A stretch of DNA of 64,000 bases from Octopus bimaculoides (taxonomy: Eukaryota), in contig NC_068994.1 of NCBI RefSeq assembly GCF_001194135.2, forward strand, positions 58,977,421 through 59,041,420. Reading direction: 5' to 3'. Positions 3,265-37,742 of this stretch are shown in pieces. A model generated the notes under the pieces. It ran no database searches. It worked only from the letters and a program-made list of their open reading frames with translations, and was not told where the DNA came from. The position numbers were made by a program, and so were the translations under genes. Every line of letters starts with the position of its first letter. Within the stretch, counting starts at the first letter, position 1.

Positions 3265-4978
3265 GCTCGAAATCTCCAGATGCGGAATGCATGACACAAC
3301 ACAGATTAGTCGTTAGTAACTTCAGAATGAAGCAGACACTGAAACGAAAAACACGGAGAAGGAAACTAAAAGATTCTGCAATTTGGAAGATATTCAGAGA
3401 AATTCTGACACATATGACTGTAGGGAGCAAGATTTAGGTAGCTGTAACATAGATAACAACTGGATATCTTTTAAATATGAAATGTGGCTGGAGCAAGGTC
3501 CTGGTGGTGGACTGATGTAGTTGATAGGGTGATAAAGACAGGCTTGGAAACCCTAGTAGTAAAGAGGTAGAAGGAAGCATTACCGCATGGCTAGAAGGAC
3601 AGGAATATTTGGCTTATGGATGAAACAGAAACGAAAAGATTTGCACATGTCCTCCAACATGAGGATCAGAAGTATGAAGTGTTCAGGATTGTGAGACAGT
3701 GTGTGTGAAGGGTTTATTTATAATGACTCACTCTCAAAATATGGAAGACAAGAAAGTGCTTTCATGAGTGGCTATTGAACATAATGAATACATGGGATAA
3801 AGAGGGGCTACTTCATGCTGACCCTACAAAGGGACCAGCATCATGGCAAAGCTATCAAGGGCATGAAGAGAGGGAAAGCTGCAGGTCCATAAGGGATAGT
3901 TGCAGAGATGCTTAATATAACCAGTTGAGCAGGATACATGATTACCACCTGGATGGTTAATCAAGTCATAGCAAATGACTGACATAATATCATTAGAAAT
4001 TGCTACAAAGGCAAAGGAGGTGCTTTCGAGAGAGGAAATTACAAAGGAATCAAACTACTGGATCAGGATTTGAAGGTCAGAGAGAGAGTTCTAGATTTGG
4101 GACAAGGGAGACTTAGAGGAGATGCAATTTTCCTAGGTATTGCAAGAGAAATACTTGGCTAAATTCCAAGCAATTTATTGACTTGGAGAAAGTGTTTGAC
4201 AGGGTACCACATACAGGAATCTGGTGGTCACAAAGGAAACTAGACATTGACAAATTTAGTGTAAGGGTTAGGGTCCATCAAGGCTCAGTTCTTAGTCCCT
4301 TCCAATTCCTACAGGACATCACAGTGGGGTTTAAGACTGGTTGCCCATGGGAACTCCAATATGTTGATGACCAAGTTCTCATAGCAGAATCTTTAAAAGA
4401 AATTCTATACATGGAAGCTAAATCGAGAAGCCTTAAGGTAAACCTAGCAAAGACAAAGATTTTAGTGAGTAAGGAAAGAAAACAGGACCCTGATATACAG
4501 AAATGGAGTAAGTCTAAACCCCATATGCTGTACCAAGGTCAGCTATAGACATGCAAGAGACATAATGAAATAACAGGCAAACTAGCAGAGAATATGAGCT
4601 TCAATGTGTGATAGATGCACTGCAACAGTACATACTAGAAATACAGCAGAAAACGATTCTTGTGAATACTTGGACGATGCCTCACTAGAAGCAGTTGATA
4701 GCTTTTGTTATCTTAGGAGATGTCATTAGTAAAAGAGGTGACTGCTCCAAAAGTATGTTAATTATCAAAGTATGGATTGGAAAAAGTTCAAGGAATTACA
4801 ACTGCAACAAAAGTCTCTCCTCTCAGAATGAAGGGCAGATTGCACGATGCTTGTGTTAGAACTGTAATGCTGCAGGGTAGTGAGATGTGGACCTTGAATG
4901 CAGAGGAATTTAGGGGTCTGGAAAGGAATGAAGCAAGCATACTCCATTAGGTGTGCAATGTGAGTGAGCATGAATGAC
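3265..4978 (+). mobile_element. Decayed RTE-clade LINE (linker + RT), antisense within an NMNAT intron
   Basis: DLEKVFDRVP, VHQGSVLSP, GCPWELQYVDD, VNLAKTKILVS and VDSFCYL motifs across frameshifts. Confidence 0.85.
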
Positions 4979-6388: not shown

Positions 6389-6679
6389 ACGGAATTTGTC
6401 GAACAAATACTTTCAATTTTGATAGACTTCCTCCGAAAGCTCACCTGTATATATGTCTGTACATGTACACACACACACACATGTGTATATATATATATAT
6501 ACACACACACATACATACAGAGGGATACACATATACACATTCCCCCTCTATGTTGGCCCCTTGTGGGCAATAAAAAAAATCACACATACATCCAGAGGGA
6601 GAGTATAGAAGGAATAAGTTATCCTGGCAGATACCGTACTATCTCACAAATTGGTATAGATACCGGCTATCCACAACAG

Positions 6680-7246
6680 CGAAAAAACGGGTGGTCCAGT
6701 CGTCTTGAAGTAATGGAGGGTGGAATGCGCGGGCTTCGCTGGTTTGAAAGTAATGTCCACCAGCTCCGGAAAAGACGCTAAGAGAGAATGAAAAGCGTCC
6801 CCAGCAGTGGCAATAAAAAATGCTGAGCTAAGAGGGGAATTGGTAGAGCTCCTTGCCGGCGTGGAAAGGGATGTCGAGTCGTCGACAAGCCTCCGACGTC
6901 GGACATCTACCAACAACTGGAAGTGATTTAAGAAATCCACACCTAAAATAGGATACGGAATGTCAGCTATGACAAAAACCCATTGAAAGTCTCTACAAAG
7001 ACCGATGTCTAGGCATAGAGAAAGCTGACCAAAAGTAGGAATCGGGGACGAGTCAACAGCATGCAAAACAATCGCCGAGTGGCGAGGTTTGTCTACAGTA
7101 AGGCGAAGTGGCCAAATGCTACAACAGGAGCCAGTGTCAACCATGAAGAATTCCTTTGACACCTGGTCCTGAATGAATATTGCACGATTGAAAGTTGGTT
7201 GAGTGGAGGAAAGTGATGTGCTCATTTTCCCCTTTACGCGTTTCCC
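6680..7246 (-). pseudogene. pol: pol fragment: aspartic protease and the first residues of RT
   Basis: FMVDTGSCCSIWP (DTG at 7130-7138), ADIPYPILGVDFLNHFQLLVD, HYFKTTGPPVFS; entered by -1 slip at GGGAAAC (7240-7246). Confidence 0.88.
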
Positions 7247-7984
7247 GGTTGTTTGAAAGAACAAGGCTGAATACATCTTCGCGCCTTGTGTGAGAAGGTC
7301 TCATGGTACCAGCACATACCATTTTTAGGTCTGTTGGTTCCCCGATTTCGAGAAGTACTGCGAGAACGTGAGCTGCTCCGAGACTTCGAGCGGCAGAGGT
7401 TGTCTGCGCGACGTGTGAGATTATCGATCCTGCGAAGCATGTCATCGTTGGACACAAAAGACGACTGCCGTGGAGCATCTGTGGAGGACTCAGTACACTG
7501 CCAAACAGCGCGAGAAGGGTTTCCCGAGTATTCGAGGACTATCGGCCATTGTGGCCACTTGGTCCACAGTGTTTGACTCAAATGCCGTCGCTAGAATGGT
7601 TTGAACGTGCAACGGCAGACGAGAAAAAAATATCTTGCGGAGAAGTGGGGCATCTGTTGATTCTCCGCTCAGATCTCGTAAAAGTGTTAGAAATTCCGTG
7701 GGAGTCCTGTCCCCGAGCTGTTCGTCTGCCATCAGCTCATTGAATCGGCTGGTGGCAGACCTGGTGGTCCTGTGTAGGATCTTGTTTTTCACCTCGTCAT
7801 ATGTGGCGTCGTCTTTTGGAGATGTGAGTAAGTCTTTAGACACTTTTGTAAGCGATGGAGGCAGATTGCAATAAAGCAACTTTAACCTCTTGGATGGCGA
7901 GATGTCATAGGTTTGAAAATAGGCCTCCAATTGTGCGAAATAGATATCGGTATCACCAATGAATGTGGGTAAACCATGCGACAT
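7234..7984 (-). pseudogene. gag: Gag of the Gypsy element with a frameshift at ~7540
   Basis: MSHGLPTF..YFAQLEAYF..LGDRTPTEFL..LRKIFFSRLP; frameshift in AD|VLEYS; RS-rich tract; CWYHETFSHKARRCIQPC (CHCC box, 7261-7314). Confidence 0.88.
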
Positions 7985-8563
7985 TTTTGTTGGGATGACT
8001 CCGTCGAGGTAGGAAAAAGGAATGGAAAGAAACAATGAAAAACGAAGTCGTATGAAATATACGAGAGGCCAAAAAGAAAAGACACAATATTTCCCGTGTT
8101 TTGTAAGTTACAGTGTGCACAAGAGAGAGAGAAAAAAAAATTTGTCAAAATTTTGTTTTGTTTTTTTCTCGTGAGGGGTGTTGCTTTGTACTGTCTGTAG
8201 AAAAAAAAAATATTGTTGACCAACCTTACGTCGTTGCTGCAAGGCAAAAAATTTTTTTTAATGTATGTGCGTGTGTGTAGTATTTTTTTCTTTTTTTTTT
8301 GTAAGACAATAGATGGAAGCAACGTAGTTTGTTTTTCTTTCAAGCCACGTGGAGTCAGACGAAAAGAGAAGTCACTGTTCGCTCATTTGTTCTTTCCTCA
8401 GCCTCTGTTGGTGTTGAAAGAAACACGCGGGTGAGAGTTATAGGCGGCGGCTCGTGTCATAGTAGTTGCTGGTTCAGTTTCCAGGCTGTATGGTATTTTT
8501 CTCCGGGGTAATTAAAACTGTTGTATTTGTTCCATTTCCTCGTCTCTCGTGTTTTTTTTGTAG

Positions 8564-11906: not shown

Positions 11907-12337
11907 TGCAGAGCTGTCACTAACAATATACTTGTTTATTCGTACTTTCGTATTCAAACAAGTTTTTTTTTTCTTTTTTTTTTTGGTTTTCTTTTAAACT
12001 ATATTTTAAAGCAGATTTTTGTAATTAAATTTGCTTTAAAATGCATTTGTGAAAAGAATAAACTTTAAAAATTTTCGTTTGTAATATTCAGCTTAAAATG
12101 TAGTAAACTATTTACTTTTAATCTCTTTACCCGTTACAATCTTGTTAGTGTCAGTAATATTCCACTACGTTTTTTATTACAAATTAACTCAAACCATATC
12201 AATTAATCAGTATTTTCGACCATGAATGAAACTGTTGGGTTACGTTAAAGTAACTTGACTCGATATAATTATGTAGCGGGTTAGGGATACGAAACTATTT
12301 TTGCTCCGATCCAAAGCTATCGGTTACCGTGACAATT
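11907..12337. promoter_or_regulatory. Putative bidirectional promoter between the minus-strand first exon and FANCC
   Basis: About 430 bp between divergent ATGs; CpG visibly retained; CCGTTA (MYB-core-like) at 12131 and TTTGAA (CHR-like, minus strand) at 11953-11958. Confidence 0.55.
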
Positions 12338-14230
12338 ATGGCGGACATCAGTTCTTCTTTGAAGTCAGCGACGTCGATTGATACAAGCCTGGAAAACAAG
12401 ATAACTACATTATTGAATCGATTAAATTTCACTTACGACGAGAGTATACCGAACCCAGATAATAATTTATTTAAAAGATTTCCAGAAATTATAGGAATAC
12501 TTCAACAATTAAAGCAGTATTTATCAGAGAAGTCTAATTATAGTTCGTTATTCCCGGACGACATGAAAACTATTTATCGATTGTTAGACTGTTTGACTCA
12601 GGTAAATAGTTTAACGTTACATTCAGACATCAATCGACTTATAATTGAGTGTATTTTAAATACGTATGACTTTGGTCATTTCCTACCTACAGGAATACGA
12701 ACCAATCCGTGGGTCATCTCAAAACTTCGAAACTGTTTCATGTATGTCGATGCCGAAGGAAAATATATTCATGATCAACTTGGCTTGCATACCGAATTAA
12801 TATGTGACAAGGCCATATCAGTGTTAAGACAGTATATTATGGACCTTAAGATAAGCACTGATACTGTTAATGGTACACCTCTCCCCAGTGGCATCGTCAT
12901 GTCTTCAGACAGTCTTTCTGATGTTTGTTCAGTTTTGGTTTATCTCTTGCACAATTCGCAGCAACCACGCCTTCAGACTTTGGTTGATGCATTCATGGAC
13001 TATCTTTCAACACAGCCTTGTTCGGGTGTCGTTTTAGACTTTTACCAAAGCTTGGATAGTTTAGAATCGTGTATATATACGGGTAGTCTCGTATCTGCTA
13101 ATCCGCCTTCTTCCTGGTACCTAAGCTTCTACAGTCGATATAGATTATGGATCAGTCATATGCCTAGTTTGGAACGAGAAATCTTGTTGTTGATCCGCGC
13201 AAGCTTGGATTGGTGTCACTGTAGAAAACGCATGGAGAGAATAATGAATTCCAGATCGCTTCCCAAAGCCTGTGCGGAGGATACACAGTTATTTTTGGAA
13301 ACTTCGAGTGTATTCCACTCTGTCGTTAAGAATATGATTGCTGTGGACGAGGAAGACATTACAGCGAGAAAACATTGCGGTGGTGGGGCCAGCATTTTCA
13401 ATGTATTGTCTGTTTTCTATGAATGCATTCATCGACACACAACAGAATACAGCTCTAGAGAAGATTCAATATCACTTTATTGCTTGTACCCGTCATTTCT
13501 TCATGAAATACTTAAACAGTATATTTTGATTCCTTACCAGGACATATCAGAATGTGTTCAAAGTATGAAGTCTTTCTTCCAGCAAACAGAAATCTGGAAG
13601 TATGCTGGATTCGATCTTGTTCACGTTTGGTTTCAGACACAGCACTTCCGTTTGAAATTTATAGCGTATCTATTGAAACATAGTTTCACTGTACCAGAAG
13701 CTAACCTAGAAGCTTGGTTAATCGCTTTGCTGTGGTTCTACAGAGCTGACCTTAGTTCATCGCACTGTGAAGACACAAAGAATATCCTCCATGGGTTTAT
13801 TAAAGAAATTAGGCTAATATTCCATCAGTGCAGCCCCACGTGGGATCAAGTGAAGCGCATCTTACCAGTAACTGTTAATCTTCATCCTGAGTTCAAATCA
13901 GTCATTGATAGTCTGTTGTTGACCTTTGTGCTTTACAGCAAAGTCGACCTCAGTTTTGTAGACAGTGTTCTGCAATTCATTATAGACAACAAGGGAGATC
14001 ATTCCATCCATTCACACCTGGTTCTTCTCTTATCAGCTGAAATCTTGTTACAGTTTGAACCCAGCCATAGTTCATTAGCCATTCGAAGTAGATATGTAAG
14101 TCTGGTCAAACCCTATCAATCCAAGTTGAAAGATGACCAGCAGGATAACTTTCATTACAGCAATTATTTGACCACAGAAGCTCAACAGATTTGGGTTGGA
14201 TGTGAAGATGTCATCAAAGATTATTCATGA
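12338..14230 (+). CDS. FANCC: Fanconi anemia group C protein homolog, single coding exon, 630 aa from ATG 12338
   Basis: Uninterrupted ORF with colinear matches to human FANCC as recalled: KRFPEIIGIL~ERFPTIGQLL; LWISHMPSLEREILLL~LWLRHLPSLEKAMLHL; KRMERIMNSRSLPKAC~RRIECFIKDSSLPQAA; PYQDI~DPQDI; WFQTQHF~WFLFIHF; IALLWFY~LWLLAFYY; LLLTFVLY~LLLNFLLW. Track start (GTG 12329) reassigned to attATGg. Confidence 0.82.
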   Translation: MADISSSLKSATSIDTSLENKITTLLNRLNFTYDESIPNPDNNLFKRFPEIIGILQQLKQYLSEKSNYSSLFPDDMKTIYRLLDCLTQVNSLTLHSDINRLIIECILNTYDFGHFLPTGIRTNPWVISKLRNCFMYVDAEGKYIHDQLGLHTELICDKAISVLRQYIMDLKISTDTVNGTPLPSGIVMSSDSLSDVCSVLVYLLHNSQQPRLQTLVDAFMDYLSTQPCSGVVLDFYQSLDSLESCIYTGSLVSANPPSSWYLSFYSRYRLWISHMPSLEREILLLIRASLDWCHCRKRMERIMNSRSLPKACAEDTQLFLETSSVFHSVVKNMIAVDEEDITARKHCGGGASIFNVLSVFYECIHRHTTEYSSREDSISLYCLYPSFLHEILKQYILIPYQDISECVQSMKSFFQQTEIWKYAGFDLVHVWFQTQHFRLKFIAYLLKHSFTVPEANLEAWLIALLWFYRADLSSSHCEDTKNILHGFIKEIRLIFHQCSPTWDQVKRILPVTVNLHPEFKSVIDSLLLTFVLYSKVDLSFVDSVLQFIIDNKGDHSIHSHLVLLLSAEILLQFEPSHSSLAIRSRYVSLVKPYQSKLKDDQQDNFHYSNYLTTEAQQIWVGCEDVIKDYS

Positions 14231-35182: not shown

Positions 35183-36670
35183 CTATGGTAACTCAGGGTC
35201 TAAATGCCAGACCAGATGTGCCATAAACTCCAGCCGGTTGCCGAGTTTCTTCAGGCATTTTCTGCAAGTGAATGGATCAGCATCGTCTGCGGAATGCAGG
35301 CTGTTGTGCAACATGCACATAGCATAGTCCTCAAACCAGATTCCGCAGTATTCACAGCGTCCCAGTCTCTTGCCATTCAATAAGTATGGAGGTAAAGTCA
35401 ATGATGAGGGATTGTTGCTGTTGTTGTTGCTGTTGTTGTTGCTGTTGTTGTTGTTGTTGCTGTTACTGTTGTTGTTGGTGTTGTTGTTGTTGTTGGTGTT
35501 GTTGTTGCTGTTGTTGTTGTTGTTATGGCTGTTGACTGCAGTCAGCACAACTGAGTTTGAGATGGCTGTCATCTTGTTTGATGAGATCATGCGACGGGTG
35601 CACACTTCCGCACGTGTCACACTGCTTTTGTTGCTAGCCAAAAGGCTTATTGTACACCTTGGTGCAGTTTTTGTGCCACTGCTGACAATTGGCTCACGTT
35701 TTATAACAGCCTTCAGTGGCCTGCTGGCCTTGCGCAGGGCACTTCTGTTGGAATTGCCATCTACTGTTGCAGATTTTGACTGCGCACCCTCGGTGTCAGT
35801 GCTGTTGCTACCAGACTTCCCTGTCACCATGTAGAAGGCAGCATTGGAGCTGCTGGGCAGGGCATCGCTGGCAGTTATGGTGCTCTCGTCTCCGACGTCT
35901 GCTGCGGGGCCTACGAGAGAGTAGCCAGGAGATACGGCTATTTGCAGCGGTTCATTATCCTCATTCGAGCTGGGCTTGGAAGTCGAGAGATCGGCGTCGA
36001 ACGACTGGTCTTGGAGATTGGCAGCCATGATGACAGTGGCGCTGTTGTTGTTATCATGGATATCAGCTGTGGCATTGTTGCTGTTGTTGTTGCTGTCCTG
36101 GTCACCACCAACAGCATTGTTGCTGGTGTCAGTTTTCCTATCAGATGGCTGCACGATCTTGTTGCCAATCGACGGTATCTGAGCGAGACAGAAACGAGCA
36201 CAACCAAGCCATTTCCCTTCACCGTCAGTCGTACTCGTCTCAGTACTGGTACTTGGTACTCCGTCAGCTCCCTCGCCACTCGATCTTATGTCCGTCTTGA
36301 TGTTATGGAGCCGTTCGTGTTTCTCAAGTTCCTCGGCTTCCTGGAAACCTTCGCCGCACTGGTGGCACAAGTGGATCTGGTAGACGTCGTGGCGTCGTAA
36401 GTGACTGCCGAGTATCTGTGACTTGTAGAACTGTGACCCGCAAATGCGGCACATGTTCTTCTGCCGATGTGGCGAGTGTATCTTGAGATGTTGCTTTACA
36501 TGATCTGAGCGTGTAAAGCGACGGCCGCACAGGTTACATACATAAGGTCTTTCTCCGCTATGCACTCTCGAGTGACGCTGCAGCTGCGATGGTGTGCTAT
36601 ATGACCCACCGCATATCGAACACGAGTGCACCCGTTTGCGCTTCTTTGGTGCAGCTGGACTAGGCTGCAT
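35183..36670 (-). CDS. C2H2 zinc-finger transcription factor, 4+2 fingers, Hunchback/Ikaros-like C-terminal finger pair
   Basis: 495-aa ORF; NLS-like PKKRKRV (36629-36649); four C2H2 fingers (36305-36622) with an SGERP linker; Asn/Ser-rich middle; C-terminal CEYC..FED.AM...H...H....DPFTC..C......RLEF..H (35204-35356). tttag|aaaATG may be a splice acceptor, so upstream exons are possible. Confidence 0.92.
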   Translation of the reverse strand: MQPSPAAPKKRKRVHSCSICGGSYSTPSQLQRHSRVHSGERPYVCNLCGRRFTRSDHVKQHLKIHSPHRQKNMCRICGSQFYKSQILGSHLRRHDVYQIHLCHQCGEGFQEAEELEKHERLHNIKTDIRSSGEGADGVPSTSTETSTTDGEGKWLGCARFCLAQIPSIGNKIVQPSDRKTDTSNNAVGGDQDSNNNSNNATADIHDNNNSATVIMAANLQDQSFDADLSTSKPSSNEDNEPLQIAVSPGYSLVGPAADVGDESTITASDALPSSSNAAFYMVTGKSGSNSTDTEGAQSKSATVDGNSNRSALRKASRPLKAVIKREPIVSSGTKTAPRCTISLLASNKSSVTRAEVCTRRMISSNKMTAISNSVVLTAVNSHNNNNNSNNNTNNNNNTNNNSNSNNNNNSNNNSNNNSNNPSSLTLPPYLLNGKRLGRCEYCGIWFEDYAMCMLHNSLHSADDADPFTCRKCLKKLGNRLEFMAHLVWHLDPELP

Positions 36671-37742
36671 TTTCTAAACACTTTTCCAAAAAAAAATAAA
36701 CAATTATGACAAAAAAGGGTTGGTTTTTTTTTTTTAAATGTAAAAATAATATTAATAAATAAATAAAAACTTCAACTGAAAGTCAAAGAACAAAACAACA
36801 AAAATACACACTGGTGTTGTGCAAGCTTTAGCAAGACCACCAGCAACTCCACCAGCAGGTTTAGCTGTGTAATTCTGTGTTATAGAGCAGAGCAATAATT
36901 TGATGCCAGTTTTTCAAAGTGTCCGAGGGTGTGCAGAGGCAGCATCTATACTTTTAGTTTTATCACATGGCCAAAAGTTGCCGGTTCAAGGTGTCTATGG
37001 TATTTGTAGTTCAGTATCATCTTGATTGGATTCATTGATGTACAGATGCTTCTGTTCATAACAGAATGGACTCCTGTAGAGAAAGAGAGAGAGAGAGAGA
37101 GAGGGAGAGAGTATGAGTGTGAGGTGGAAATGTAAGCATAAACAGAAAACAAAAGAGTAACAAGCAACAGAAATGCAGTAAATAAAACAGGTACAACAGG
37201 CTGTGGGGGTTGAGAGAGAAAAAGAGAGAGAGAGACTACTATAGTTTGCATGAAACACTGTCTAATAAATGTTTATAATTGTTTTTTTTAAGCCAAAACA
37301 ATGCCAAATAATTATACAGGTAAATGGTTTGTACTTTTACATGGTTATTTCAATAATTCGGGAAACAAGAAATCTTCAGAGTAAAGGTGTTCTTATCTAT
37401 CTTACAAAATCTTTTGAAAAGAAGTTTTCCTAATATTGAAATTTTTCAAAGTTGCATTGTTTTGGCTGACAAAAATATAATTTAAAACATGTTTATATAC
37501 ATATATATGCACGCACGCACACGTGTGTATCCCCTTAAACAAGAATATTATTGATAGTGACTTCAAAGTTTCTGCTAATTAAGCTATTGTCAGACAATGG
37601 CTCAACTCACCAAAGTCACTGTCAACGACATTCTTGTGTAAGACTTGTCCTCTCTGAAAGCATAGAGTAACTCATCAGATTAATGTGAAATTGTTTTAAT
37701 TGTAACTGAACATAAAAACAAACTCACACACACATACACACA

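What the first reader, a model, noticed from the sequence alone, without database searches (positions are those of the whole stretch)
35183..36670. Hunchback/Ikaros-type dimerisation fingers coupled to unrelated DNA-binding fingers
The C-terminal pair CEYCGIWFEDYAMCMLHNSLHSADDADPFTCRKCLKKLGNRLEFMAHL aligns closely with the Ikaros dimerisation domain ([29 protein letters not shown]....DRYEFSSHI) and the Hunchback C-terminus, and the 4+2 layout is the same. The N-terminal fingers are not Ikaros- or Hb-like: finger 2 has an EGR/KLF-type RSDHxxxH helix and fingers 3-4 have non-canonical linkers. It may be an uncharacterised HIL-family member able to heterodimerise with and retarget Hunchback/Ikaros-like factors, distinct from the tandem-array C2H2 expansion of cephalopods.
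Basis: partly seen in the sequence, partly recalled or inferred. Interest (0 to 1): 0.7.

Follow-up and report, generated by a model that had tools for sequence, protein, structure and literature searches.

The report
Mollusc Hunchback/Ikaros-like zinc-finger gene, octopus paralogue
This is an intact, strongly conserved octopus gene for a zinc-finger transcription factor that has four DNA-binding-type fingers at one end and a Hunchback/Ikaros-style finger pair at the other; it is one of five cephalopod copies of a gene found throughout molluscs, so it is an undescribed member of a known kind, not an oddity.

Summary
Window 35183-36670 (-) is one uninterrupted 495-aa ORF with four N-terminal C2H2 fingers, a roughly 310-aa low-complexity spacer and two C-terminal fingers.

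An HMM built only from mollusc hunchback C-terminal pairs scores this pair at 44.5 bits. That is above all 2,444 ordinary adjacent finger pairs tested (maximum 37.3 bits). The N-terminal fingers are not Hunchback-like (26% identity).

It is not an orphan. It belongs to a family present in chitons, gastropods, bivalves and cephalopods. That family is ancestrally 5+2 fingers, usually has a single coding exon, and has one representative per named non-cephalopod species in my sample. Octopus bimaculoides has five copies. The window copy lost finger 1, begins with an NLS-like PKKRKRV, and changed a DNA-contact residue (K to Q).

Purifying selection is very strong: 62 synonymous and 0 non-synonymous changes in the N-terminal fingers against a distant orthologue.

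The true hunchback/Ikaros orthologue lies elsewhere (G000 C2). At least eight more genes in this genome end in such a pair.

Pairing with its own paralogues (65-79% identical C-terminal pairs) is far more plausible than pairing with Hunchback (about 40%). Dimerisation itself is inferred, not shown.

The parts
35183..36670 (-). Complete single-exon coding sequence, 495 aa plus TAG stop. It is the O. bimaculoides orthologue of O. vulgaris/O. sinensis 'myosin-G heavy chain-like'.
   Evidence: ORF and translation. It is 95% identical to P0002, which is likewise one contiguous ORF in O. sinensis and O. vulgaris. The ATGCAGCC start context is shared with the distant orthologue L018. dN/dS is 0.22 overall and 0 in both finger regions.
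36629..36649 (-). PKKRKRV (aa 8-14), a classical monopartite NLS-like basic motif. It sits where the other family members have a conserved 'KYTVQVVTKY' motif plus finger 1.
   Evidence: Read from the sequence and the family alignment. It is conserved in P0002 and P0003. NLS function is inferred from its resemblance to the SV40-type consensus (my own knowledge).
36560..36622 (-). N-terminal finger a (aa 17-37), equivalent to ancestral finger 2. Helix is TPSQLQR: -1 T, +3 Q, +6 R. Position +3 is K in every other family member aligned.
   Evidence: A canonical SGERP linker follows it.
36476..36538 (-). N-terminal finger b (aa 45-65), equivalent to ancestral finger 3. Helix is RSDHVKQ, the EGR/Sp/KLF-like recognition helix. 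This is the most conserved finger across the family.
   Evidence: PDB and database hits to EGR1, WT1, KLF4 and Sp map to aa 13-65.
36389..36451 (-). N-terminal finger c (aa 74-94). It is preceded by the non-canonical linker SPHRQKNM. Helix is KSQILGS, which varies among paralogues.
36305..36367 (-). N-terminal finger d (aa 102-122). Helix is acidic (EAEELEK), so it is an unlikely base-contacting finger.
   Evidence: The functional reading is inference from the canonical C2H2 contact positions.
36176..36214 (-). Short conserved motif KWLGCARFCLAQI (aa 153-165). Its core is G-x-A-[RK]-F-[CS]-[LV]. Function unknown; it may be a cofactor-docking peptide.
   Evidence: The core is present in 18 of 30 family members from bivalves and cephalopods. 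It is a conservation island in the family alignment.
35690..35719 (-). PLKAVIKREP (aa 318-327). It matches the SUMO consensus psi-K-x-E and the 'synergy control' pattern P-x(0-4)-[IV]-K-x-E-x(0-3)-P.
   Evidence: The strict pattern is found in 6 of 30 family members, against 1.1% of shuffled sequences. It is conserved in P0003. The functional reading is inference.
35411..35533 (-). Poly-Asn/Ser tract (aa 380-420), encoded by an imperfect (AAC)n/(GTT)n microsatellite. Its length varies between species.
   Evidence: Tandem Repeats Finder reports 35412-35524, period 6, 18.8 copies. Indels relative to O. sinensis/O. vulgaris, and absence in L018, are seen.
35204..35356 (-). C-terminal finger pair (aa 439-489): CF1 aa 439-459, acidic 9-residue linker SADDADPFT, CF2 aa 469-489. 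It is of the Hunchback/Ikaros dimerisation-finger type. Helix contact positions are D/A/M/L in CF1 and N/L/E/A in CF2.
   Evidence: HMM test, BLASTP, genome searches. The pair is near-invariant across Mollusca, with 24 invariant columns of 63. Against L018 there are 33 synonymous and 1 non-synonymous change. The AF2 monomer gives two beta-beta-alpha units at mean pLDDT 79.

Best explanation
The locus encodes a functional nuclear C2H2 transcription factor. It is a cephalopod-specific paralogue of a family I found only in molluscs, which has the Hunchback/Ikaros-like (HIL) architecture.

Shown:
- The CDS is an intact single exon under strong purifying selection.
- It belongs to a family found in chiton, gastropods, bivalves and cephalopods. 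The family has one representative per named non-cephalopod species in my sample and five copies in O. bimaculoides.
- The ancestral layout is 5+2 fingers. This lineage lost finger 1 and its flanking motif, and changed the +3 contact residue of the next finger from K to Q.
- The C-terminal pair is statistically of the Hunchback/Ikaros dimerisation-finger type.

Inferred mechanism:
- Fingers a and b, joined by the only canonical linker and nearly invariant across the phylum, make the core DNA contacts. From the textbook recognition code the site should be G-rich, roughly AGG followed by G-A/G-N, but this is low confidence.
- Fingers c and d, with non-canonical linkers (d also has an acidic helix), contribute little to base reading.
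- The C-terminal pair has hydrophobic or acidic residues at the usual DNA-contact positions and an acidic linker. It probably does not read DNA. It probably mediates self-association and pairing with the four sister paralogues, whose pairs are 65-79% identical.
- The spacer carries a SUMO/synergy-control-type motif and a conserved G-x-A-R/K-F-C/S-L peptide. These probably recruit cofactors, most likely for repression.

Loss of finger 1 together with the K-to-Q change suggests altered target specificity after duplication.
For: - ORF, fingers and coordinates.
- Orthologues as single ORFs in O. sinensis, O. vulgaris and a more distant assembly.
- Selection: omega is 0.22 overall. Against L018 the N-terminal fingers show 62 synonymous and 0 non-synonymous changes, and the C-terminal pair 33 and 1. 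Only the CDS aligns to L018.
- Family membership and distribution: with the chiton member.
- Five O. bimaculoides paralogues, each in one long open frame.
- Tree: four cephalopod paralogue groups form one clade (SH-aLRT 99), while each named bivalve, gastropod and chiton species contributes one sequence.
- Finger 1 loss and the K-to-Q change.
- Single-exon CDS also in scallop and chiton.
- Dimerisation-finger type of the C-terminal pair.
- Identity of the pair among paralogues.
- Spacer motifs.
- HIL architecture and the role of the C-terminal pair in known members: bioRxiv 10.1101/2022.06.20.496913, PMC12774644, PMC5393059.
Against: - No experiment here or in the literature I could search addresses this family. 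Dimerisation, DNA binding, nuclear localisation, SUMOylation and expression are all inferred.
- A dimerisation-finger-like sequence does not guarantee dimerisation. C. elegans HBL-1 is reported not to homodimerise through its pair.
- The similarity to the Hunchback pair (44.5 bits) clears generic pairs by only about 7 bits, and is well below Ikaros against Hunchback (about 71 bits, using an IKZF1 sequence recalled from memory).
- PDB sequence and fold comparisons return only ordinary DNA-binding tandem fingers.
- The strict SUMO/synergy-control motif is present in only 6 of 30 family members.
- Restriction to molluscs rests on named hits.
Confidence: 0.7

Rival explanations
1. One reading: the protein uses its C-terminal pair to heterodimerise with Hunchback/Ikaros-like factors and retarget them to new DNA sites.
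For: The pair is of the same type as the octopus hunchback/Ikaros orthologue's pair. Ikaros-family members do heterodimerise through such pairs (PMC12774644). The genome holds many proteins carrying such a pair that could form a network.
Against: Identity to the octopus Hunchback pair is only about 40%, against 65-79% to the sister paralogues. Dimerisation in this subfamily is described as selective (citing McCarty et al. 2003). Worm HBL-1 showed no interaction with five other family members. The closest relative of this pair is class B (72 bits), not Hunchback (39 bits).
Confidence: 0.1
2. The C-terminal fingers are a second DNA- or RNA-binding module, as in bipartite binders such as EVI1 or ZEB, and do not dimerise.
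For: AF2 models two ordinary beta-beta-alpha fingers. The best structural and sequence matches in the PDB are DNA-bound tandem fingers. HBL-1 shows that such pairs need not dimerise.
Against: The canonical base-contact positions are D/A/M/L in CF1 and N/L/E/A in CF2. The linker is acidic (SADDADP) rather than TGEKP. The pair scores as dimerisation-finger type above every generic pair. Near-invariance of hydrophobic helix-surface residues across the phylum fits a protein interface better than a base-reading surface.
Confidence: 0.12
3. It is a decaying or neutral intronless retrocopy, or just another member of the cephalopod polydactyl C2H2 expansion, with no specific function.
For: The CDS is intronless. 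The spacer is low-complexity and carries a microsatellite-encoded poly-Asn tract. Retroelement debris lies nearby in the window.
Against: There are no non-synonymous changes in either finger domain against O. sinensis or O. vulgaris. Against L018, at saturated synonymous divergence, there are none in the N-terminal fingers and one in the C-terminal pair. The single-exon structure is ancestral to the family in scallop and chiton. The protein has six fingers in a 4+2 layout rather than a long TGEKP array. The family is conserved across Mollusca.
Confidence: 0.03

Closest known systems
Hunchback, and its mollusc orthologue (O. bimaculoides P0229, 'ikaros family zinc finger protein', G000 C2:104.75 Mb)
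   Same: It has a cluster of DNA-binding C2H2 fingers plus an isolated pair of fingers at the extreme C-terminus. The two pairs are each other's best local match (40% identity). They share D at -1 of CF1, a hydrophobic residue at +3 and an aliphatic one at +6 of CF1, a DPF-x-C linker end, and N at -1 and F at +4 of CF2.
   Different: The DNA-binding fingers differ (26% identity, C-x2-C-x-Y-S-T type in Hunchback). The linker inside the pair is two residues longer. CF2 ends H-x3-H (HLVWH), not H-x4-H. It is a separate locus and a separate family and is not the orthologue.
Vertebrate Ikaros family (IKZF1-5)
   Same: The layout is 4+2 in this particular paralogue, with a C-terminal pair used for homo- and heterodimerisation in Ikaros. 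IKZF1's pair, recalled from memory, scores 36.2 bits with the family-A HMM, just above every generic pair (maximum 35.5).
   Different: The N-terminal fingers are unrelated. The 4+2 count here arose by loss from 5+2. There is no PEDLS CtBP motif in the window protein. The IKZF comparison rests on remembered sequences, so it is a lead and not a test.
C. elegans HIL genes (hbl-1, ehn-3, ztf-16 and others)
   Same: They are a precedent for lineage-specific HIL-type genes that combine diverse N-terminal finger clusters with a Hunchback/Ikaros-type C-terminal pair. NCBI's pipeline named one sister paralogue 'ztf-16-like'.
   Different: No orthology was shown. The worm sequences were not compared here.
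Mollusc 'class B' 3+2 proteins (O. bimaculoides L006, C10:72.67 Mb; variously annotated 'Ikaros-like', 'Pegasus', 'ZNF628-like')
   Same: This is the nearest relative of the C-terminal pair: 72 bits with the family-A HMM, about 48% identity, and a shared H-[IL]-V-W-H ending. Named full-length matches are all molluscs. It lies on the same chromosome as family A in eight species.
   Different: It has three different N-terminal fingers, a QDRIEF-type CF2 that is closer to Ikaros, and an extra conserved C-terminal tail (KYPHTIPNY).
Sp/KLF/EGR-type fingers
   Same: Finger b carries an RSDH-x-x-x-H helix. These proteins are the best non-family hits to the N-terminal region.
   Different: Only one finger resembles them. 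There is no three-finger C-terminal Sp/KLF/EGR domain, and scores are far below those of family members (75 bits or less, against more than 200).

Membership tests
Hunchback/Ikaros-like (HIL) architecture class | An N-terminal or central cluster of C2H2 fingers of DNA-binding type | tested here: met
   There are four fingers at aa 17-122. Pfam zf-C2H2, zf-C2H2_4 and zf-H2C2_2 match.
Hunchback/Ikaros-like (HIL) architecture class | A separate pair of C2H2 fingers at the extreme C-terminus | tested here: met
   Fingers at aa 439-459 and 469-489 of 495, about 316 residues after the N-terminal cluster.
Hunchback/Ikaros-like (HIL) architecture class | The C-terminal pair is of the dimerisation-finger sequence type, not a generic tandem pair | tested here: met
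   The hunchback-only HMM gives 44.5 bits, against a generic maximum of 37.3 (n = 2,444). Reciprocal genome searches and BLASTP agree. The margin is modest.
Hunchback/Ikaros-like (HIL) architecture class | The C-terminal pair mediates homo- or heterodimerisation | not testable with these tools
   Only a monomer could be folded, and no solved reference structure exists in the PDB copy. This needs multimer modelling or biochemistry.
hunchback / Ikaros proper (orthology) | It is the orthologue: best reciprocal match over the DNA-binding fingers and the C-terminal pair | tested here: not met
   The O. bimaculoides orthologue is P0229 on C2. The window protein matches its DNA-binding fingers at only 26% identity and groups with a different, mollusc-wide family.
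Mollusc 'family A' (5+2 finger family defined here) | C-terminal signature C-x2-C-x-I-W-F-E-D ... L-H-N-S-L-H-S-A-D-x2-D-P-F-T-C-[RK]-K-C-x-K-K-L-G-N-R-L-E-F-x-A-H-L-V-W-H-L-[ED]-P | tested here: met
   The signature is matched in full. There are 24 invariant columns across 18 diverse members.
Mollusc 'family A' (5+2 finger family defined here) | Five N-terminal fingers preceded by a KYTVQVVTKY-like motif | tested here: not met
   Finger 1 and the motif are absent here and in orthologues P0002 and P0003. Fingers 2-5 align column for column. No upstream exon encoding them exists in the window. I read this as a derived loss within the family.
Cephalopod polydactyl C2H2 expansion | Long tandem arrays of fingers joined by TGEKP-type linkers, lineage-restricted | tested here: not met
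   There are six fingers in a 4+2 layout with one canonical linker. The family is conserved across four mollusc classes. For contrast see arrays such as L010, L011 and L013-L015.
Sp/KLF/EGR | Three consecutive C-terminal fingers with family-specific helices | tested here: not met
   Only finger b has an RSDH helix, and the architecture differs.

The most novel reading that the evidence does not exclude
Molluscs may have built a sizeable combinatorial network of transcription factors around the Hunchback/Ikaros-type C-terminal finger pair. O. bimaculoides has at least 14 genes ending in such a pair, falling into roughly eight to ten sequence types. The cephalopod-specific five-fold expansion of family A, including this copy with a lost finger and a changed DNA-contact residue, would then create new DNA specificities. 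These could be mixed by paralogue heterodimerisation, in the way bHLH or bZIP families work, and might contribute to cephalopod-specific development.
Probability: 0.15. Interest if true: 0.6.

Novelty: new member of a known kind. Interest (0 to 1): 0.35.

Why it matters
Hunchback and Ikaros are classic temporal and cell-fate regulators, and their C-terminal finger pair is one of the few well-documented cases of C2H2 fingers used for protein-protein contacts. This finding shows that molluscs carry an additional, deeply conserved family built on the same plan. I found no description of it in the literature, and databases give its members misleading names such as 'myosin-G heavy chain-like' and 'EVI1-A-like'.

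Cephalopods expanded this family five-fold, and at least one copy changed its DNA-reading end. That provides:
- a correct annotation for these genes;
- a natural panel of closely related C-terminal pairs for studying what sets partner selectivity, the structural basis of which is still unsolved (PMC12774644);
- candidate regulators to examine in cephalopod development.

It does not overturn anything. Lineage-specific HIL-type genes are already known from C. elegans.

Tried and rejected
- PDB sequence searches with the window C-terminus, a family profile and the octopus Hunchback pair. Even the genuine Hunchback pair finds only generic fingers, so the PDB copy holds no reference pair. The Ikaros-family entries that did appear are N-terminal finger constructs in cereblon complexes. 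The Eos entry 2ma7 scored only 16-19 bits with the family queries and was not among the 60 best matches of the Hunchback pair. These searches cannot test the claim.
- AF2 monomer plus Foldseek against the PDB. The model has two ordinary fingers, no hit has E <= 0.001, and the result is uninformative about dimerisation.
- The exhaustive phmmer search. The top-150 list is swamped by polydactyl proteins whose many weak stretches sum to high scores. It was useful only after filtering for hits with few stretches.
I used single-sequence queries instead.
- A search for an upstream exon encoding finger 1 found none in the window. The start codon context is conserved in the distant orthologue.
- Flank conservation against O. 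sinensis is uniformly about 84-89%, so it cannot delimit UTRs.
- Literature. One search was too loose to be useful. No paper holds hunchback, Ikaros and octopus together. Kastner et al. 2024 and Sun et al. 1996 are not held. McCarty et al. 2003 is known to me only through citing papers and was not looked up. What I say about their content comes from citing papers.
- CtBP-type P-x-D-L-S motif: absent from the window protein, present only in the ztf-16-like paralogue.
- tRNA and Rfam scans of the window found nothing.
Full report
**What is there.** Window 35183-36670 on the minus strand is a single open frame of 495 codons ending in TAG. An in-frame TAG lies two codons upstream of the ATG.
- The protein (P0001) has C2H2 fingers starting at aa 17, 45, 74 and 102, then about 316 residues of low-complexity spacer, then two more fingers at aa 439 and 469, six residues from the C-terminus.
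- Pfam sees only generic C2H2 models.
- The window is G000:C14:58977421-59041420 of a 2.34-Gb genome. I take this to be Octopus bimaculoides. The NCBI protein 'ikaros family zinc finger protein isoform X1 [Octopus bimaculoides]' is 100% identical over the 69 C-terminal residues queried from locus L008, and sits on a contig of 192,492,730 bp, the same length as G000 C2, which carries L008.

**Is the gene real and functional?** Yes.
- The closest protein (P0002, 95% identity, full length) is annotated 'myosin-G heavy chain-like' in O. vulgaris and O. sinensis. It is encoded there by one contiguous ORF.
- A more distant orthologue (P0003, 63% identity, ENA assembly ERZ21867824) has the same 4+2 layout and is also a contiguous ORF.
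- By Nei-Gojobori counts, omega is 0.22 against O. sinensis and O. vulgaris, with no non-synonymous change in either finger region.
- Against the distant orthologue, synonymous sites are saturated. The N-terminal finger region shows 62 synonymous and 0 non-synonymous differences, and the C-terminal pair 33 and 1.
- Only the CDS is alignable to that orthologue, and the ATGCAGCC start context is shared.
- The odd database name comes from a poly-Asn tract (aa 380-420). It is encoded by an imperfect (AAC)n microsatellite whose length varies between species.

**Is the C-terminal pair really Hunchback/Ikaros-type?** I tested this several ways.
- Forward genome search. A 63-aa query of the whole O. 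bimaculoides genome returns the gene itself and four close paralogues. Next come loci whose long open frames end in an isolated finger pair: L006, L007, L008 and L009, with L012 a little lower among the first polydactyl-array hits. L008 is the hunchback/Ikaros orthologue. Its orthologues are named 'protein hunchback' in Aplysia and Saccostrea, and 'Ikaros-like' elsewhere.
- Hunchback-only HMM. I built it from 60 distinct mollusc hunchback C-terminal pairs and scored every adjacent finger pair in all proteins fetched so far. Family members score 37-51 bits and the window type 44.5 bits. The 2,444 non-isolated pairs have median 18.4, 99.9th percentile 36.9 and maximum 37.3. That null set is drawn largely from the best polydactyl hits to this very query, so it is conservative.
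- BLASTP against the octopus hunchback protein. The best HSP is C-terminal pair against C-terminal pair (48 bits, 40% identity). The N-terminal fingers align at 26%.
- Reverse genome search. The hunchback pair recovers the window locus as its sixth match overall, at E = 1.1e-5.
- Converse HMM. With a family-A HMM, the hunchback pair (39 bits) and human IKZF1's pair (36 bits, sequence recalled from memory and therefore only a lead) exceed every generic pair with a canonical linker (maximum 35.5). Drosophila Hb and IKZF5, also recalled from memory, do not quite exceed it.

My conclusion is that the pair is a divergent member of the dimerisation-finger class. The margin over background is real but modest. 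PDB-based tests were uninformative, because even the genuine hunchback pair finds only generic fingers there.

**What family is it?** It is not an orphan.
- Word-indexed and exhaustive searches recover dozens of proteins with a nearly invariant C-terminus. The signature is C-x2-C-x-IWFED...LHNSLHSAD-x2-DPFTC[RK]KC-x-KKLGNRLEF-x-AHLVWHL[ED]P, with 24 invariant columns of 63.
- Members come from bivalves (Pecten, Mytilus, Saccostrea, Mercenaria, Mya, Dreissena, Sinanodonta), gastropods (Haliotis, Patella, Gigantopelta), cephalopods (Octopus, Argonauta, Acanthosepion) and a chiton (Liolophura).
- Every named member is a mollusc. No non-mollusc protein with this C-terminus appeared among the 150 best of 1.84 billion representatives. 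Many hits are unnamed, however.
- The typical member has five N-terminal fingers preceded by a KYTVQVVTKY-like motif. The window protein and its orthologues lack that motif and finger 1, and begin instead with M-x(n)-PKKRKRV, a classical NLS-like peptide. No exon encoding finger 1 exists elsewhere in the window.
- The remaining fingers align column for column. The first two (TPS[K/Q]LQR and RSDHVKQ helices, joined by SGERP) are almost invariant across the phylum. The one exception is that K at helix position +3 of the first is Q only in the window lineage.
- The CDS is a single exon in octopus, scallop and chiton. The Haliotis model is not contiguous.

**History of the duplications.**
- O. bimaculoides has five copies: L001 (the window) and L003 on C14, and L002, L004 and L005 on C10.
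- In a maximum-likelihood tree, four cephalopod paralogue groups form one clade (SH-aLRT 99). The fifth ('Eos-like') sits on a long branch. Each named bivalve, gastropod and chiton species contributes one sequence.
- The window gene is therefore a cephalopod-specific duplicate that later lost a finger. Its 4+2 count matches Ikaros by convergence.

**Wider context in the genome.**
- Besides hunchback (L008), at least eight further O. bimaculoides loci end in a pair of this type behind quite different finger clusters: L006 (3+2), L007, L009, L012, L021 (the most Ikaros-like), L023, L028 and L029.
- The nearest relative of the family-A pair is class B (L006): 72 bits, with a shared H-[IL]-VWH ending. 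Its named full-length matches are also all molluscs.
- Class B lies on the same chromosome as family A in eight species, 10-22 Mb apart where I measured it (and contig lengths).
- Lineage-specific multiplication of HIL-type genes has a precedent in C. elegans.

**How it probably works (inferred).**
- Fingers a and b have the only canonical linker and canonical contact residues (T/S/Q/R and R/D/H/Q at positions -1/+2/+3/+6). They should form the DNA-reading core.
- Finger d has an acidic helix, and fingers c and d have non-canonical linkers.
- The C-terminal pair has D/A/M/L and N/L/E/A at the contact positions, and an acidic nine-residue linker. These features, partly shared with the octopus hunchback pair, suit a protein interface better than DNA reading.
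- In Ikaros-family proteins both fingers of the pair are needed for selective homo- and heterodimerisation, and the structural basis is unsolved (PMC12774644). Hunchback is reported to dimerise in the same way (PMC5393059).
- Sequence identity of the pair is 65-79% among the octopod paralogues, about 48% to class B and about 40% to hunchback. The likeliest partners are therefore the protein itself and its sister paralogues.
- The spacer carries a SUMO/synergy-control-type motif (PLKAVIKREP) and a conserved G-x-A-[RK]-F-[CS]-[LV] peptide. I read these as cofactor-recruitment elements, with low confidence.

- Right: the observation, the HIL-type classification, and the statement that the DNA-binding fingers are unrelated to those of Hunchback and Ikaros.
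- Needs correction: the gene is one paralogue of a conserved mollusc family, not a singular fusion.
- Unsupported: retargeting of Hunchback. This idea is weakened by the identity figures above and by worm data in which HBL-1 neither self-associates through its pair nor binds five other family members. The same data are a caveat for my own dimerisation inference.

**Novelty and interest.** This is a new, apparently undescribed member (subfamily) of a known kind of transcription factor. It is useful for annotation, and as a natural series of related C-terminal pairs for studying partner selectivity. It is mildly interesting for cephalopod evolution and is not surprising in kind.

Noticed in passing
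window 12269-14230 (+): An uninterrupted 653-aa ORF matches Pfam Fanconi_C (PF02106, E = 1.1e-12, covering profile positions 44-531 of 560). This looks like an intronless FANCC-like gene about 21 kb from the zinc-finger gene.
   Followed up: partly
window 4117-4548 (+) and 6644-8107 (-): Retroelement debris. There is a reverse-transcriptase fragment (RVT_1, below Pfam's cut-off), and ORFs with a protease-like VDTGS motif and a DUF7041 domain.
   Followed up: partly
window ~9.2-10.2 kb, ~45.4 kb, ~52.9 kb, ~54.3 kb, ~56.0-56.5 kb: Runs of N (assembly gaps) flanked by TA/CA-type microsatellites. None touches the gene studied.
   Followed up: no
window 35412-35524: An imperfect (GTT/AAC) hexamer array encodes a 41-residue Asn/Ser/Thr tract. 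It has indels between Octopus species and is absent in the distant orthologue. It probably explains the misleading NCBI name 'myosin-G heavy chain-like'.
   Followed up: yes
G000 loci L006 (C10:72.67M), L007 (C4:131.9M), L009 (C26:22.68M), L012 (C18:10.9M), L021 (C10:55.70M), L023 (C25:22.94M), L028 (C5:17.70M), L029 (C3:3.70M): At least eight further O. bimaculoides genes, besides hunchback (L008) and the five family-A copies, end in an isolated Hunchback/Ikaros-type finger pair behind different N-terminal finger clusters. L021 (MYTIHMGYH...CNMCGHQSRDKIEF) is the most Ikaros-like.
   Followed up: partly
L032/L033 (chiton), L034/L035 (abalone), G000 C10: Family A and its nearest relative, class B, lie on the same chromosome in chiton, abalone, Gigantopelta, scallop, Mercenaria, Mya, Sinanodonta and octopus. 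They are 10-22 Mb apart where measured. This is consistent with an ancient intrachromosomal duplication plus conserved macrosynteny.
   Followed up: partly
P0004 aa 421 and P0007 aa 420 (orthologues of G000 locus L002): The 'ztf-16-like' sister paralogue carries an exact PEDLS peptide, the CtBP-binding motif reported for Ikaros proteins. The window protein has none.
   Followed up: no
window 36674-36700: A polypyrimidine run followed by AG (ttttttttggaaaagtgtttag) lies immediately upstream of the ATG. It looks like a splice acceptor, which would imply one or more untranslated 5' exons further upstream.
   Followed up: no
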